Source: Asterias rubens (taxonomy: Eukaryota). From it: a stretch of 64,000 nucleotides of DNA. Where the stretch lies: positions 8,556,001-8,620,000 of the forward strand of contig NC_047069.1 in the NCBI RefSeq assembly GCF_902459465.1. The letters are read 5' to 3'. The translations under genes and the position numbers were made by a program. Shown piece after piece: positions 14,840 through 21,349 of the stretch. The stretch's first letter is position 1, and each line of letters starts with the position of its first letter. Under the pieces are notes generated by a model. The model saw only the letters and a list, made by a program, of their open reading frames with translations, had not been told where the DNA came from and searched no databases.

Positions 14840-15975
14840 TTAAAACCAAACATTATTATTATGTTCATGCTTACCTCTCCTTCTTTGCAATATTGTAAAG
14901 TCGAAGTTGTTGTTATTACTTTGTTATACGTTTCCCCAGGGTATGGGGTTTGTTCCGATTTTGGAATAAAACAAATAATACAACACAATACAATACAATA
15001 TACAATACAATAACAAAACAATACTAATCAGTAAAGATACAAAATAAAAACGAGTGGGCATAAATATACGTTGATAATTTTCTATGAATACATGCCGAGA
15101 TCAAATGACTGTGTTATTTGATCGGATGCTTAAAGTCCTTGGCTACCGTTCTCTTAACAAAAACAACGGTATTTGAAATTGAAACGAGGAATAGAATAAA
15201 CAATGCTTCAATTCGATTATTCTTAGACATAGCTTGCAAACCATCCAACTGTTTGGTCAAGACAAACATAGACCAATCACTTTCTACCTGCATTGCGGTA
15301 TGGTTGTAAACTACGGGATTTTTGTCTTCATTCTTTGCTGAAAGTAAAAGGCAACATGTGACTTATTTATCATCGTGCAGTACATATTTCGGTTTGGCAA
15401 ATAATAACTATCTGTCTCAGGTTAAAAGCATTGTGTTGAACTGTGAAAGTTACAAGCTAGATGTTGGTGTGTTTTTTTTTAGATAATCTTCCTATCAACT
15501 AACTCGGCAAACTCACACAAGGGGATATAAACGTCAAGCTGGCAACAACCAATCTCTCTCATCATACATTAGTTTTTAAACGTTAAAACGTCTATGATTA
15601 TGAATTGCACAAAAACAAGACATTGTGATTCAGTATTGGTTCCATGAATCCTCCTTGAATTTCCGTAGGACCGTTTTCGCGATGTGACAGGATTTTCCTC
15701 GTACAATTTTCTCCTTCATCGATCTTTATTGTATGTATTTTTACTGCTCGATCAACCGTCAAGCAAGGGTCGATTTTGTTCTTGAAGATTTAGGTCCAAT
15801 GATTCTGCGAGTATTTTTGGTAAATATTTCCAGGAAAATCTGTACGTTGTCCTTGCTTTTTATTTTTCTATGAGTGAGGCGTCCTATTTATTTTAAACTA
15901 GGAGACAAAAACCGTGTCCTTTGGGTTGCGGTGTTTTCAGAAAATTCCTTGACCGCTTTGTTTCAAGTGTTTTGA

Positions 15976-16001
15976 TGTTGTTGTTGTTGTTGTTGTTGTT
16001 G
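15976..16001 (+). repeat. (GTT)n microsatellite
   Basis: Directly visible; a similar degenerate tract lies at about 553-581. Confidence 0.85.
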
Positions 16002-16193
16002 TGTTTTTGGTTCGTTTTGTTTTGTTTCCCCCGTGAAATGAAGACCTATATTCAGTTGGTATAATGATACATCAAATACACGAGAACGCACTGTATTATG
16101 AACACAAAACACATTTCACTAGGCGTACATTAGGTAGTCGCGGCAAAATAATCATAAACACCCCGGGTTTTTGTGCAATGGCCATGGCTTTAA

Positions 16194-16487
16194 AGGCAGT
16201 GGACACTATTGGTCATTACTCAAAATAATTATTAGCATAAAACCTTTCTTGGTGACGAGTAATGAGGAGAGGTTGATGGTATAAAACATTGTGAGAAACG
16301 GCTCCCCCTGAAGTGCCATAGTTTTTGAGAAAGAAGTAATTTTCCTCGAATTTGATTTCGATGACCGATCGCAAGTTCGATGACCGATTGAGCTCAAATT
16401 TTCACAGGTTTGTTATTTTATGCATATGGTGAGATACACCAACTGTGAATGCTAGTCTTTGACAATTACCAATAGTGTCCACTGCCT
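16194..16487 (+). mobile_element. Kolobok-like MITE family 1, internally deleted
   Basis: TTAA flanks and TIRs intact; central hairpin region missing. Confidence 0.88.
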
Positions 16488-17624
16488 TTAAACAGGTTTT
16501 TGGGGAGACACAAGTTTATGATGCCCAACTTTCGAATGATTTGAAATCGCTGCACAAAAAAGTCGATGTACTTTTCATCACTTGAAGCCAAATGTGCTTT
16601 CGGTGTGCTGAACAACATACCCGTAAGAAACAGGTCAGGAAATGCAAGATCATTCTTTACAAAATGGTGTTCCTGAGGACGCCAGACTGGATTTAAACCA
16701 TGCATGCACAGACTTTGAAATATATCATTTGTACCAGTTCCTATCCCCAGCTTCTTCTCTTATTACACTACTCCTTTCCATAATTTAGATATCGCGTTTC
16801 TTCATTTTCAAGTCTGTATTTTATTCATGAGTTGAATTCTAGTACGACTGAATTCAGATTCGCATTGCTTAACCATGCCCCGTTTTCTACCAAAAGAAGT
16901 TTGACCTTATAGACAACATACAGCCAGGAATGTTTTCATGTTACCGCATCCATCACATACGTATATGGAAAGTCATTTTGAAGGCTATCACGTTGAATTT
17001 CAAAATGGTTTAGGGGGCTTTGGCAAACACATCAGCAGGATGAGTTAGAACAAACGTCTACGGTAAACACAATTATAGCTAGGATGGTTTATGCACGCCA
17101 GAGGATAGAGACGGTTTGAGAACTGGGTGATCAATAAAATTGAACTCTGATCAAACCAGAAAGGTGAAATCCTATCACACCGTACCAGCACATCAATTCC
17201 TTGTACAAACCCCACTCCGGGTTCCACCCACCTTGGGCTTGTGGTAAAGAAACCGTTCACTGATTCTCAGTCGATCAGGATCGAATAACCTGCCGTGAAT
17301 TTGAGAGGAGCCTCTGTAAAGTACTTGGGGTCCCGGCTAAGTAGAAAGAGTACAAAACAAAACGAAGTGTGGGAACATGTGTGTTCTCCAGTGGTGTAAA
17401 TTTAATATCACAAGCGAAAGTAACACCTGCACCGTTAAATTCGGTCATGTGTCATGTTGTGCTCATGTTTTCGAGTGACTGTACTCGAGGGGCAGATCGA
17501 TTGGAAGTGGATAATTGAATACATTGTACTTTGACTCGACACATCTTTCAATTCGCTGACGATTTCGAAGCTGCCATTTTTCTCAGTTTAATCAACAATG
17601 AAGGAAATCAAAAGAGTTTTTTTT

Positions 17625-17738
17625 ATATATATTGCTCACTCATGAGATTTTCAAAATTGCATTCTTTCGGTTTCATTAACAATTTAAGGAAATTAAAATG
17701 AGTTTTTAATATAAATATATATTGCTCACTCATGAGAT
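17625..17738 (+). repeat. 24-bp direct repeat pair (ATATATATTGCTCACTCATGAGAT), 90 bp apart
   Basis: Identical at 17625-17648 and 17715-17738. Confidence 0.8.
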
Positions 17739-18843
17739 AAAAACGTTCATTAGGCGATTGAAAAAAGTAACAAAGTTTGGCCAGTAACTCTTCCCCCCCC
17801 CCCCCCCCCTCACAGCAAGCACACATCTTCACTCCCGTTTGTTACTGACTAAAAAAAAACAAGAACAACTCGAGCGTTCAAAATTTGTATTTTTATTTAA
17901 AACCTTCCTCTGAACCCACGTTGTACACCTTTCATCACGGAGAATGTTTTTCTTTTTCCATACGGTGCCAGAGGGCCACTGTTTTACAAGGAACGAAAAA
18001 AGGAGAGGAAATTAAGACGTGTGAAAAGGGGAAAATATTAAAACGCGTAGTGGGAAATGTACAAGCGAGGCAGGATTCGATGAGACAGAGGGTTCCACTA
18101 CTGCCCGGAGGAATCTAAGATGAGAGAAACTGTGAGCATATATGTGAGCGTATTGTAGTAGCGGCACATAGTGAAACTACTGCACATGTGTTTCCATCAG
18201 TGGATTTCAGGCGCAGTTCCTTGTCCCTCTTGTAGATATTATCTTCCCTTTGAGCATACAGAAGCAGGGGATAATTCGAGAGTGGAGAAATTGCAATGAA
18301 CCTCCGTATTGAGTGAGCCGCGAAAACCAATATCAGTAGGAAACAGATGGTCCATTATCTTATAGTCCGAATAGAATCTTGAATTTGAAGAGTTGATTCT
18401 GTATTGAAGAGGATGGGACCGAATTTCAAGATTTATAGTGTCAAAGAATACTATTTATAAGCGAAGAGTACAAAACTGTTGATGTAATCCAAGTCTAGCT
18501 ATTCTGTGTAGTCTACTTCTGGAATAATGGTCTAATTTCCGTAATTCAGTTAGTAATCTCGGAGTTCAACTCGGGGCAACTTGACACAGATACTCCCTTA
18601 TCTATCTTGCCATCGAGCGGTTCGTTTCACATTTTGTCCCCTATCTGCTTTACATTTCTCCGGTCTACACTAACAAAACAATCTTATCCTGCCGTTGTTG
18701 GGTGTATAGTTTCCCCGGTTGCATTGTCCAATGTGAAGTTGGTGTGCAGTATATTGACCTAAAGCAGCCTGTGCGACGTGATTTCCTGTATAAATATGTT
18801 TTTAGTATTTAACAGAAATCTTGACTTGGCTCAATGTGCCTAC

Positions 18844-18889
18844 AAAATAAGAAATAAGAAACTATATATAGTTTCTTATTTCTTATTTT
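18844..18889. repeat. Perfect 46-bp spacerless palindrome
   Basis: AAAATAAGAAATAAGAAACTATA|TATAGTTTCTTATTTCTTATTTT. Confidence 0.9.
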
Positions 18890-18964
18890 ATATAGTAACT
18901 TGCGGGTACACCAATAATGTAAATCTCTCTGTGATAGTGTTGGCTCTGAAAACAGCCGGTGTGG

Positions 18965-19006
18965 TATCGACGTTTCGAACAGTAAACTCTGCTCGTCTTC
19001 AGGAAA
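18965..19006 (-). ncRNA. Minimal type I hammerhead ribozyme motif, best-preserved copy; head of a repeat spanning about 18896-19006
   Basis: Minus strand reads UUUC-CUGAAGA-C-GAGCAG(AGUUUA)CUGUUC-GAA-ACGU-C-GAUA: conserved core, 6-bp stem II, palindromic ACGU stem III, GUC cleavage triplet, stem I with 3 of 4 pairs. Confidence 0.72.
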
Positions 19007-21349
19007 ATCCGGTATTGTTGTCAATTAAAGGAACTATGTGAACCGTTTTTACTTGACACACAACAGGGGGGAAAGTACACGTTGAAAATATCACAACCGA
19101 CGGTGCTGAAAATGAAAACATCTGAAGGACTGTTATTATATGTTTCAGTGTAGGTCCACGTTATTTTAAACGGTTTATGTATTGACAAAAACACTATGCA
19201 ATTCGTGCCACCAATGAGAAAAATTTTCCTTATAATATATATACATTTTTTTTTTGCTTATATTTTTTTAACACAGTGCTATCACCGAAGAAAAACAATG
19301 TCAGGTAATCGGCAAAGACTATATAAACAGTGTCCTCACCAAATTTGTGTTCTGCTCTGAACAAATACACGCATTATTATTAAAAACACGACCCCGATTT
19401 GCATAGGTCCGTATAGAACAAAGTCAGAGCTGAATTGATGAGTTCCTGTCCCCTCAAGTAACGAAAAAAAAAATCGACGAAAATCCTCCCTATTTCCTTG
19501 AGGAATGTTCTTGGAGTGGGTGTGCTGTGGCAGAAGATCAATAACGTGCTAGAGAATCACGTCCCTGCATGTGCAAATTACTCTCGCACTGCATGAAAAA
19601 CGCTCACCATAAACCGGCTGAACGATTTTTTTTCCAGGGGATAAACAATACTGTGACGGGGTTTCAGGATAGACAACAAACATGCGCGGTCTGTATAGTC
19701 GTTGATCCATGATAAGTGCTCACCTGTTTTAGGCCCGTTAATTAAAATGCGTTATAAGTAAGATAGAAGGCCCTTTCCCCATATTTAAATCGCAAACAAC
19801 GTTACGCATCTTCGAAATGGAATCTCACATTGCTCTCAGATCTTAAAATCCGACACCATCATTGATTGTGGAAAGAAACCAGATACCGGTATTCCACTCC
19901 AAGAAGTGAAATAAACCAGATCGAATTTGTTGAGATTTCTATTGAAGGGTGTGTTGCCATTGTTGACGTGTCATATCACATCACACTCCGTCAAGATAAA
20001 TTGTAGTGCATTATGTGTTCCCTTTTCACCCTTACCTATCACTTCAATCACTGAGTGGCCCGGAGCCCTCTTCCTCTGCAAGGTGACCCCGCCTGGCCCA
20101 CGATTCTTCTGGCGTTATCGCTCACAGGAGATGTTGGTATTAACCCCCCATTATGTGCTGAATCACACTATAAGTCATAGTATTATTATCGGCTAAAAAC
20201 TGTCTACGTCGAATAGCTTTTCATATCCTGACGCTAAATATTGAATTTCTAGACATCGATATTTCGACTAAATTAGGCAGCACATAACAGTATGGATTAT
20301 AACTTGACAGGAGACAAATTGGCTAGTTAAAAAAAATACTTTTTAAGCGTCCCTGGATCTTCAGGTTTTGTCGTGAGTCCCATATTCTGGCAAACATGAC
20401 CCTCCCACTGAAGACAATAGTATTACACAAATAATAATTATGAGCATTTATATTATCTATAAACATTGTTAGTAAATTATTAACAATTATGATAAACAAC
20501 ATCATCAAGAACATTATTTTACAACTACCTTGTTTCATAAATGCATAAATGCAGATTTTCTTGTTATATGAATTTCGAAAATGTTGTTGTTTGTTAAAAC
20601 TAAATAATTACGCAACGAGATTTAACGTGATGCAATGATGACCTATAGTTTTTTGACAAGTGCAGTCATCCACCTTTAAGGTATCTGTCATTTAACTTGA
20701 TAAATCGGAAGACTCTATAAGTGGATGCGTTTACAATGCTGGATTGACTTTGTCATTTCCTTTTAGAGCGTTGACTCGTTTCATTAACTTTTAGTCGTTG
20801 ACATCTCCTCCCCCCTTTTGTATGCTTCTTGGCAAATTGTATTGGCCTTTACAAGCTGTTATTCCAAAAAGATAGCACCATCCCATATTGAACTGCTAAT
20901 CAATGCTTATCATTAATACTGTGGTGTTACCGCAAACCAAATATATATTGATACCTCGCCATGCATTGCCTTAAATCCTAAATTAATACTGTTGTTATTT
21001 ATATAATGGAATTTAAATAACTGCAGTTTCTGCTGCTCCAAAAAATGTCTCCAAGATGCAATACGTACTGAACCCTTTTTGAATCAACAGATTTGGGCTT
21101 GAGCTAAGGCTTGAGCTTCGTTCGCTTCAAGTTGATTAAAACCCCGTTTATAGATAATGGCACGTTTTCTAAGCCCAAGCCTAAGGTTTCTAAACCAGTC
21201 CGATTATAGCCAAAGTAACCGTAGTGTACACGAGCGGAGGTAAAAAGCATTTTCAGACGTCTTGTTGTATTGGCTATACAGTCTAAGTACTGGTAACTGT
21301 GGTTAATAAAACTTGATGAAGAAGTAGTCTAATGTTAAGCGTATGAATA

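What the first reader, a model, noticed from the sequence alone, without database searches (positions are those of the whole stretch)
18965..19006. Near-intact minimal hammerhead ribozyme with a palindromic stem III (predicted to cleave as a dimer)
Seen on the minus strand: UUUC CUGAAGA C GAGCAG-AGUUUA-CUGUUC GAA ACGU C/GAUA. The catalytic core CUGAnGA...GAAA is complete, stem II has 6 pairs, the triplet is GUC, and there is one extra C after A9. Established: minimal type I hammerheads with short self-complementary stem III occur in Penelope-like elements and non-LTR retrozymes of animals and can cleave as dimers. Inference: cleavage between 18969 and 18968. Invisible to the ORF track and likely unannotated.
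Basis: partly seen in the sequence, partly recalled or inferred. Interest (0 to 1): 0.8.

Follow-up and report, generated by a model that had tools for sequence, protein, structure and literature searches.

The report
Decayed Penelope-type minimal hammerhead in starfish repeat
The motif is a genuine but worn-out copy of the small self-cutting RNA (minimal hammerhead) carried by Penelope-like jumping genes, sitting at the head of a short repeat present over a thousand times in this starfish genome; the kind is known, and its one unusual trait is that the ribozyme is followed at once by a copy of the signal that ends histone messages.

Summary
The motif is real and lies exactly where stated. It is not a chance hit. 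It heads a ~135-170-nt dispersed repeat whose 34-nt ribozyme core has 1,292 copies in this 417-Mb starfish genome, against 0 in the reversed control.

Every "odd" feature is the published signature of the minimal hammerheads of Penelope-like elements (PLEs): no helix III loop, palindromic ACGU, 6-bp helix II, extra C after A9. Sister subfamilies keep helices I and II through compensatory changes (9 of 11 pairs). GAUCAG/CUGAUC has 147 copies; the two mismatched hybrids have 1 and 9.

The repeat inserts like a PLE: optional 36-nt 3' tail, target-site duplications, head-to-head inverted dimers. It has no ORF, and I did not find its autonomous partner.

Ten nt past the cleavage site lies a histone-mRNA-type stem-loop plus downstream element (Rfam Histone3 34.8-36.1 bits in young copies). 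The scan had already noted this pairing on other DNA of this genome. I found no paper describing it.

The window copy is old and solitary: 13% from the family majority, with helix I and the stem-loop damaged. It very probably does not cleave. RNA-seq shows no cleavage ends or circles. A few genomic copies begin exactly at G1.1, a weak hint of past cleavage.

The parts
18965..19006 (-). Minimal (PLE-type) hammerhead. Helix I 5' strand 19006-19003; core CUGAAGA 19002-18996; unpaired C 18995; helix II 18994-18989 with 18982-18977, loop 18988-18983; GAA 18976-18974; palindromic A15.1-C-G-U16.1 18973-18970; C17 18969; helix I 3' strand 18968-18965. Predicted cleavage between 18969 and 18968.
   Evidence: Sequence read. 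Architecture matches the min-HHR definition in PMC4209133. Family copy number. Covariation of helices I and II.
18942..18957 (-). Histone-mRNA-type stem-loop (GGCUGU UUUC AGAGCC). It is damaged in this copy by a C>G change that makes a G.G mismatch at the fifth pair. The family majority is the canonical GGCUCU UUUC AGAGCC.
   Evidence: Rfam Histone3 RF00032 scores 19.4 bits on the window copy and 32.4 bits on copy L008. It scores 34.8-36.1 bits, above the gathering score of 34, on young copies L071-L073.
18921..18930 (-). Purine-rich AGAGAGAUUU, 11 nt after the stem-loop. It resembles the AGAGAU downstream element seen after histone-gene-like stem-loops in this genome.
   Evidence: for the window. 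One search lists histone-gene-like ends (stem-loop, ACCCAACUCAUU, AGAGAUAG) beside element copies (stem-loop, ACCACUCCUUCAAA, AGAG). The similarity is by eye and not tested functionally.
18848..19007 (-). The whole copy of the short non-autonomous retroelement: hammerhead, stem-loop, body, short-form 3' end, no 36-nt tail. It holds an internal 24-nt inverted duplication of its own 3' end. No target-site duplication is detectable.
   Evidence: The copy differs from the 30-copy majority at 18 of 135 positions. The TSD search found nothing for L001.
18844..18889 (.). 46-nt perfect palindrome, made by the element's 3' terminal ~23 nt lying next to its own reverse complement.
   Evidence: spurious miRNA and psbA hairpin hits; self-match on the opposite strand; comparison with the family's 3' end.

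Best explanation
The motif is a decayed, solitary copy of the minimal hammerhead that heads a short (about 135 nt, or about 170 nt with tail) non-coding retroelement family. That family was spread through this starfish genome by the machinery of Penelope-like elements.

In the family's source transcripts the RNA folds into helix I (4-5 bp) and helix II (6 bp) around the CUGANGA / GAAA core. It has no helix III of its own, so cleavage after C17 needs a second hammerhead, either from a tandem unit or from another RNA. The two palindromic ACGU stretches then pair into a shared helix III.

By analogy with studied PLE hammerheads, the reaction is weak, probably protein-assisted, and not required for insertion.

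Shown here: the sequence, the family, the covariation of the helices, and the PLE-type insertion signatures.

Inferred: the dimer mechanism, the cleavage, and the mobilising enzyme.

The window copy itself has a mismatched helix I and no partner, and is almost certainly inert.
For: 1. Architecture. The motif meets every listed trait of metazoan PLE min-HHRs: core, no loop 3, palindromic 15.1-16.1, unpaired nucleotide between A9 and G10.1, G10.1-C11.1, 6-bp helix II, 4-bp helix I in the family majority (UCUC/GAGA).

2. Copy number. 1,292 copies of the 34-mer against 0 in the control.

3. Covariation. Across nine sister hammerheads, 87.8% of cells pair against 70.9% in shuffles (0 of 500 reach it). 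Nine of 11 pairs change on both sides. Slid controls give 20-46%.

4. Linkage. GAUCAG+CUGAUC 147 copies; the mismatched hybrids 1 and 9.

5. Conservation. The hammerhead is 96.2% identical to the majority in 29 copies, the rest of the element 92.1%.

6. PLE insertion signatures.
- An optional 36-nt 3' extension in about a third of copies. [quoted passage not shown]
- Direct repeats of 9 nt or more at the ends in 9 of 30 copies against 2.3% in controls.
- Head-to-head inverted dimers with the tail at one end only, as drawn for PLEs in PMC8557442.

7. A coding PLE of this genome (921-aa ORF, C-terminal GIY-YIG, at least 118 hits) carries a hammerhead of the same build.

8. Seven copies with unrelated upstream triplets begin exactly at G1.1. 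Zero begin 4 nt upstream and about one begins 3 nt downstream. Loci L073, L080 and L086 show the same.
Against: - No Rfam hammerhead model scores the window copy, a near-majority copy or the genome. These models expect a helix III hairpin.
- Folding energy alone is unremarkable: z about -1 for the window and majority copies.
- No reverse transcriptase or endonuclease ORF is linked to this family. None of 30 GIY-YIG loci holds it, so PLE mobilisation rests on insertion signatures only.
- RNA-seq raw reads of the species cover the family at less than one read per copy, equally in both orientations. There is no pile-up of ends at C17/G1.1 and no circle joint.
- I picked the rows of alignment A1 by eye from the list.
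- The G1.1 junction count is small. A reverse-transcriptase stop at the folded core would produce the same pattern.
Confidence: 0.85

Rival explanations
1. The family is an animal non-LTR retrozyme in the strict sense. Tandem copies are transcribed, cut by the dimeric hammerheads into unit-length RNAs and circularised. The circles are abundant and serve as the retrotransposition template.
For: Unit length of about 170-180 nt falls in the retrozyme range (PMC7229834). A three-unit array with a 180-nt period lies at C11:14531315-14531793. Same-strand pairs 159-229 nt apart exist in the GAUCAG subfamily. A 2026 preprint argues that retrozymes derive from PLE pLTRs. About one copy in five carries a ~33-nt extension at the 5' end, which a permuted or circular template could produce.
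Against: The family is overwhelmingly dispersed single copies or inverted dimers. The one array seen is degenerate, with C17>U. RNA reads give less than one read per copy and no goes-back joint of unit length, whereas retrozyme circles are reported as highly expressed. Genomic copies are bounded by the hammerhead's 5' side and the tail, not permuted around the cleavage site. Standard RNA-seq may, however, lose a 170-nt circle.
Confidence: 0.12
2. The hammerhead-shaped fold is conserved for a non-catalytic job, for instance as a recognition or positioning structure for the PLE protein or as a 5'-end structure of the template. On this reading cleavage is a by-product or does not occur in vivo.
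For: In the only PLE studied in vitro, catalytic mutants of the hammerhead did not affect insertion, cleavage needed the protein, and no RNA-seq ends were found at the site (PMC11167929). Min-HHRs cleave poorly in vitro (PMC4209133). No cleavage ends appear here either. Most 5' ends of genomic copies include the whole hammerhead, so most templates were uncut.
Against: The catalytic nucleotides (CUGANGA, GAAA, H17) are invariant across subfamilies whose helices have changed. A mere protein-binding hairpin would not need that. A small excess of copies starts exactly at G1.1.
Confidence: 0.25
3. The motif is a chance match to the hammerhead consensus, or part of a tRNA-derived SINE head, since GUUCGAA resembles a B box.
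For: The descriptor predicts about 20 chance sites in a genome of this size. CUGUUCGAAAC contains a B-box-like GTTCGAA. Rfam hammerhead models are silent.
Against: There are 1,292 copies against 0 in the control, with compensatory changes in both helices. ARAGORN finds no tRNA in the element. No tRNA or SINE family appears in Rfam scans at E up to 10. There is no A box at the required spacing (sequence).
Confidence: 0.02

Closest known systems
Minimal hammerheads (min-HHR) of metazoan Penelope-like elements (Cervera and de la Pena 2014, PMC4209133)
   Same: Conserved core. No helix III or loop 3, with palindromic 15.2-16.2. An unpaired nucleotide between A9 and G10.1. G10.1-C11.1. A long helix II (6 bp) and a short helix I (4-5 bp). 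Thousands of mostly single copies grouped in consensus families with covariation. Opposite-strand pairs 100-700 bp apart.
   Different: Echinoderms are not named in that paper's main text. Here the hammerhead sits in a short ORF-less element, not a demonstrated pLTR. It is followed 10 nt after the cut site by a histone-type stem-loop, which that paper does not mention.
Poseidon PLE of Anolis carolinensis (PAc): tail signature and protein-assisted hammerhead (Frangieh et al. 2024, PMC11167929)
   Same: Two alternative 3' ends differing by a 30-40-nt optional tail. The hammerhead lies in the 5' part of the unit. No RNA-seq ends at the predicted cleavage site.
   Different: PAc is autonomous, and its hammerhead overlaps the start codon. 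The starfish family has no ORF, and its enzyme is unidentified.
Animal non-LTR retrozymes (Cervera and de la Pena 2020, PMC7229834; Li et al. 2026 preprint, 10.64898/2026.07.22.740005)
   Same: Short (170-400 nt), non-coding, hammerhead-bearing elements with long TSDs, proposed to be PLE derivatives.
   Different: Retrozymes carry canonical type I hammerheads with loop-loop contacts, occur as tandem arrays and give abundant circRNAs. This family has the minimal variant, is mostly dispersed or in inverted dimers, and shows no circle signal.
Histone mRNA 3' stem-loop and downstream element (Rfam RF00032)
   Same: The 16-nt stem-loop is identical to the canonical GGCUCUUUUCAGAGCC. The 3' flank is ACCAC, and a purine-rich AGAG block follows at histone-like spacing. 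Young copies pass the Rfam gathering score.
   Different: It lies inside a retroelement, not after a histone ORF. Two extra C residues separate the AAA of the 5' flank from the stem. Binding by SLBP or processing by U7 is untested.
CChMVd (+) hammerhead with an extra residue between A9 and G10.1 (De la Pena and Flores 2001, as cited in PMC4209133)
   Same: [quoted passage not shown]
   Different: That is a viroid type III hammerhead with a full helix III. I know it only through the citation and my own recollection, and did not read the paper here.

Membership tests
PLE-type minimal hammerhead (min-HHR) | Catalytic core C3-U4-G5-A6-N7-G8-A9 ... G12-A13-A14 and a non-G residue at position 17 | tested here: met
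   Window copy: CUGAAGA, GAA, C17. The core is invariant in alignment A1, whose rows were retrieved by a pattern that fixes most core letters.
PLE-type minimal hammerhead (min-HHR) | No helix III hairpin or loop 3; positions 15.1-16.1 palindromic, so that two copies can pair | tested here: met
   A-C-G-U directly followed by C17. The coding PLE of this genome has A-G-C-U.
PLE-type minimal hammerhead (min-HHR) | Conserved unpaired nucleotide between A9 and G10.1 | tested here: met
   C in the window copy and main family; U or A in sister families. The trait is listed in PMC4209133.
PLE-type minimal hammerhead (min-HHR) | G10.1-C11.1 closing a long helix II (6-8 bp), kept by covariation | tested here: met
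   G-C in 8 of 8 aligned rows. Helix II is 98% paired, with 4 of 6 pairs changed on both sides. Linkage counts are 147 against 1 and 9.
PLE-type minimal hammerhead (min-HHR) | Short helix I (4-5 bp) | tested here: inconclusive
   The family majority is UCUC/GAGA. Sister families have GUCUC/GAGAC, UUCGC/GUGAA, CAGU/ACUG and GCCU/AGGC. The window copy has only 3 of 4 pairs, with U.U, and its predicted fold loses helix I.
PLE-type minimal hammerhead (min-HHR) | Residence in a Penelope-like element (pLTR next to an RT / GIY-YIG ORF) | tested here: inconclusive
   PLE-type insertion signatures are present: optional 36-nt tail, TSDs, inverted head-to-head dimers. No ORF is linked, and none of 30 GIY-YIG loci holds the family.
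PLE-type minimal hammerhead (min-HHR) | Self-cleavage after position 17, as a dimer | not testable with these tools
   Only indirect data. There are no RNA ends at the site. There is a small excess of genomic copies starting at G1.1.
Rfam Hammerhead_1 (RF00163) and other Rfam hammerhead families | Covariance-model score at or above the gathering threshold | tested here: not met
   No hit at gathering on the window. No hammerhead hit at E up to 10 on the window copy or on L008. No hit in the genome at E of 0.001 or less (that search also rang in none of its 14 control genomes, so it is uninformative).
Animal non-LTR retrozyme | Tandem arrays of 170-400-nt units that give unit-length circular RNA | tested here: not met
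   Copies are mostly solitary or inverted pairs. One degenerate three-unit array was seen. No unit-length goes-back joint appears in three RNA runs. Small circles may escape these libraries.
Histone 3' UTR stem-loop (RF00032) | Covariance-model score at or above 34 bits | tested here: met
   Met for young family copies, at 34.8-36.1 bits. Not met for the window copy at 19.4 bits or for L008 at 32.4 bits.
tRNA-derived SINE | tRNA-like head with A and B boxes | tested here: not met
   ARAGORN finds nothing in L016:1450-1720. No tRNA hit in Rfam scans at E up to 10.

The most novel reading that the evidence does not exclude
The hammerhead and the histone-type 3'-end signal form one functional module. 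On this reading the element, and perhaps its unknown autonomous PLE partner, borrows the histone mRNA pathway (SLBP binding, U7-dependent cutting). A single transcript would then have three fates:
- cut by U7 into a stable, SLBP-bound RNA tied to S phase or the germline;
- cut by the ribozyme 10 nt upstream of the stem-loop, which would leave an RNA that begins with the stem-loop;
- left whole, as the template for reverse transcription.

That would be a retroelement hijacking histone RNA metabolism. I found no description of this in the papers searched.
Probability: 0.15. Interest if true: 0.75.

Novelty: new variant of a known kind. Interest (0 to 1): 0.42.

Why it matters
The hammerhead itself adds a well-documented echinoderm case to a known class. 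It shows that the "defects" a reader sees (extra nucleotide, no helix III) are diagnostic of that class, and that Rfam models miss it.

The more interesting point is the tight, family-wide coupling of a PLE hammerhead to a full histone-type 3'-end signal in over a thousand copies. If functional, sense insertions could end host transcripts in the histone manner. The element would also be a natural system for asking what PLE hammerheads are for, which is still an open question (PMC8557442, PMC11167929).

The count of genomic copies that begin exactly at the cleavage product's first base is a cheap, general "fossil" test for in vivo ribozyme activity. It could be applied genome-wide.

Tried and rejected
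- Rfam covariance models. Gathering on the window. E up to 10 on the window copy and on a near-majority copy. RF00163 on the whole genome. No hammerhead hit in any. The genome search also rang in none of its control genomes, so it is uninformative.
- Search for the autonomous parent. Thirty GIY-YIG loci with 1.5-kb flanks were BLASTed with the element and scanned by regex. None holds this family. The abundant 921-aa PLE has a different hammerhead and 3' end. Two identical hammerheads 1.94 kb apart (L070) turned out to be a tandem duplication without ORFs.
- All-against-all comparison of 1.5-kb flanks of 30 copies. It found only unrelated repeats and no shared upstream ORF.
- tRNA-SINE idea. 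Rejected.
- Folding. Monomer energies are not distinctive. RNAcofold of two copies gives a trivial extended duplex of the helix II hairpins and says nothing about the hammerhead dimer.
- RNA reads. No support for cleavage or circles. The statistics of that call are dominated by an unrelated high-copy repeat in the flank.
I used smaller requests instead.
- The similarity of the window's 5' flank to the family tail (AACAATAC) was judged too short to count.

Full report
**Observation**

The minus strand of window 19006..18965 reads UUUC CUGAAGA C GAGCAG AGUUUA CUGUUC GAAA CGUC GAUA, exactly as reported. In hammerhead numbering:
- C3-A9 is 19002-18996.
- The extra C is 18995.
- Helix II is 18994-18989 paired with 18982-18977 (six pairs, one G.U).
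- G12-A14 is 18976-18974.
- A15.1-C-G-U16.1 is 18973-18970.
- C17 is 18969 and G1.1 is 18968.

A strict descriptor of this build finds one site in the window. It finds 0.003 per random 64 kb of the same composition. That is roughly twenty chance sites per genome, so the single site alone would not be decisive.

**It is a repeat**

The window is G000:C8:8556001-8620000 of a 417.6-Mb animal genome. Earlier notes of this scan call it a starfish. A 401-nt query around the motif hit a ~120-nt stretch in many places, with 1,631 first-look candidates.

In an alignment of 30 copies, homology begins within a few bases of the hammerhead's helix I and runs for about 135 nt. The 34-nt core of the family majority has 1,292 genomic matches at 3 or fewer mismatches, at least 100 of them exact, against 0 for the reversed control. 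A generic descriptor, CTGANGA-N17-26-GAAACGTC, gives 1,032 matches against 27.

The family majority has a better helix I (UCUC/GAGA) than the window copy (UUUC/GAUA). The window copy differs from the majority at 18 of 135 positions. These include both partners of helix I pair 2.3-1.3, now U.U.

**What kind of hammerhead**

Rfam's hammerhead models do not score the window copy, a near-majority copy or the genome. They expect a helix III hairpin, which this motif lacks.

Cervera and de la Pena (PMC4209133) defined the minimal hammerhead of metazoan Penelope-like elements by the traits seen here:
- no helix III or loop 3;
- palindromic 15.2-16.2;
- a conserved unpaired nucleotide between A9 and G10.1;
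- G10.1-C11.1;
- a long helix II and a 4-5-bp helix I;
- thousands of mostly single copies per genome, in consensus families with covariation;
- low activity in vitro, and only as dimers.

**Covariation**

The list holds sister subfamilies with different helices:
- helix II: GAUCAG/CUGAUC, GACUAG/CUAGUC, GAUUAG/CUGGUC, GCCACUA/UAGUGGU;
- helix I: GUCUC/GAGAC, UUCGC/GUGAA, CAGU/ACUG.

I aligned the window copy, seven family and subfamily representatives, and the hammerhead of a coding PLE (A1). On that alignment 87.8% of cells pair against 70.9% in shuffles (0 of 500 reach it). Nine of 11 pairs change on both sides. Slid controls give 20-46%.

I chose these rows by eye. The pattern that found them fixed only the core, not the helices.

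An independent count at helix II pair 3 gives:
- GAUCAG with CUGAUC: 147 copies;
- GAUCAG with CUGUUC (U.U): 1 copy;
- GAGCAG with CUGAUC (G.A): 9 copies.

In 29 copies the hammerhead is 96.2% identical to the majority and the 13 core bases 97.6%. The rest of the element is 92.1%. A subfamily polymorphism after the stem-loop inflates that last divergence. Folding energies alone are unremarkable, with z about -1.

**How the element inserts**

Copies end either at ...UUUCUUCUUA or 36 nt further on (...CCACACCAUGCAAAGCUUCAAACAAUACUUA). About a third of the 30 copies have the long form. Frangieh et al. (PMC11167929) showed that such an optional 30-40-nt tail arises from two adjacent reverse-transcription start sites. 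[quoted passage not shown]

Direct repeats of 9 nt or more flank 9 of 30 copies, against 2.3% in mismatched controls.

Head-to-head inverted pairs are common: about nine pairs among 100 listed stem-loop sites. In L072 two copies meet 5' end to 5' end across 5 nt, and the tail is present at one end only. This is the arrangement drawn for PLEs by Craig et al. (PMC8557442).

The element has no ORF and no tRNA-like part. I did not find its autonomous partner:
- Thirty GIY-YIG loci do not hold the family.
- The abundant coding PLE has a 921-aa open frame, a C-terminal GIY-YIG domain and at least 118 hits. It has its own minimal hammerhead of the same build: GCCU CUGAAGA A GGUCC GGAUU GGAUC GAAAGCUA AGGC. 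Its 3' end is unrelated.

PLE mobilisation is thus inferred from insertion signatures, not shown.

**The histone signal**

Ten nt after the predicted cut the family carries GGCUCU UUUC AGAGCC, the canonical histone mRNA stem-loop. Rfam Histone3 scores:
- 19.4 bits on the window copy, which has a C>G change in the stem;
- 32.4 bits on L008;
- 34.8-36.1 bits on young copies, above the gathering score of 34.

The young subfamily continues ACCAC-UCCUUC-AAAAGAG. Stem-loops that look like real histone gene ends continue ACCCAACUCAUU-AGAGAUAG. The element therefore also has a downstream-element-like purine block at similar spacing. This comparison is by eye.

Earlier notes of this scan describe the same pairing on other DNA of this genome (s1-172673, s1-150093, s1-150168, s1-150206). 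Two full-text searches found no paper linking PLEs or hammerheads with the histone stem-loop.

**RNA evidence**

I laid three raw-read RNA-seq runs of the same species label on a near-majority copy, L016:1381-1800, at 90% likeness.
- The family stretch has a summed depth of about 1,000, equal in both read orientations, for well over a thousand copies.
- Single-copy flanks have a depth of 5-20.
- No place shows many molecules beginning or ending. In particular there is none at C17/G1.1 (L016 1539/1540).
- There is no unit-length goes-back joint.

This looks like passive read-through. It matches the negative result reported for the Anolis PLE. It does not exclude a small or circular RNA that these libraries would lose.

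**A genomic trace of cleavage?**

I fetched copies anchored on the stem-loop that lack a perfect hammerhead. Their 5' truncation points cluster in two places:
- at hammerhead positions 7-14;
- at the cleavage site (L073, both copies; L080; L086).

Exact-junction counts on the whole genome:
- seven copies with unrelated, diverse upstream triplets start at G1.1;
- none start 4 nt upstream;
- 3 nt downstream there is one plausible junction and six members of a sequence variant.

This small excess fits templates that had been cut at the predicted bond. It fits equally well a reverse-transcriptase stop at the folded core.

**Verdict**

The motif is a true member, by architecture and family behaviour, of the PLE-type minimal hammerheads. 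It sits at the head of a short non-autonomous retroelement with PLE-type insertion signatures.

The window copy is old, solitary and damaged in helix I and in the stem-loop. I expect no activity from it.

The kind is known. The fusion with a complete histone-type 3' signal is the unusual part, and the scan had already seen it elsewhere in this genome.

Noticed in passing
window 18844-18889: A 46-nt perfect palindrome. The element's last ~23 nt lie next to their own reverse complement, apparently a snap-back or template-jump product at the 3' end of the insertion. It triggers spurious miRNA and psbA hairpin hits in Rfam.
   Followed up: partly
L053:2913-2942 (G000:C17, also L052, L049, L032): An abundant coding Penelope-like element (921-aa open frame, C-terminal GIY-YIG, at least 118 hits) has its own minimal hammerhead. 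The hammerhead lies inside a ~100-nt stretch that is present at the 3' end of some copies and absent where a truncated next copy follows. This suggests an unusually long optional tail that contains the ribozyme.
   Followed up: partly
L071:18-50, L074, L083, and L009/L014/L015/L026 upstream of the element: About one family copy in five has a shared ~33-nt leader (ACATAAGCTCCACCACCTCCAGTAGTCCAGCA) directly before the hammerhead. It could be the true 5' end of a longer form or a tail placed at the 5' end. Unexplained.
   Followed up: partly
L072:1-370 (G000:C1:23308020-23308450): Two copies lie head to head across 5 nt and form a ~300-nt near-perfect inverted repeat. Such dimers are frequent. 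If transcribed they would give long hairpin RNA, a possible small-RNA source.
   Followed up: no
L016:1717-1800 (G000:C73): An unrelated repeat next to this copy has RNA-seq depth of 15,000-20,000 per read orientation in three runs, with sharp loose-end boundaries at 1726 and 1787-1798. It is a very high-copy or highly expressed short element.
   Followed up: no
G000:C1:1370768, C1:12291557, C2:6392835, C2:13271988, C2:23407935, C3:7926200: Stem-loops followed by ACCC(C)AACUCAUUAGAGAUAGUCA look like the 3' ends of real histone genes. They give the species' own downstream-element sequence for comparison with the retroelement.
   Followed up: no
L070 (G000:C2:14638600-14641400): A 1.94-kb unit duplicated in tandem (93-97% identity), without ORFs. 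Each copy holds a hammerhead of the GACUAG subfamily and further UUUC-loop hairpins of histone-like shape (AGUUCU UUUC AGAACU).
   Followed up: partly
runs of coded organisms B, C and D: Sequencing runs labelled as three other organisms hold 27-100% of the element's sampled 31-letter words. Near-identical copies therefore exist beyond the species of the window.
   Followed up: no
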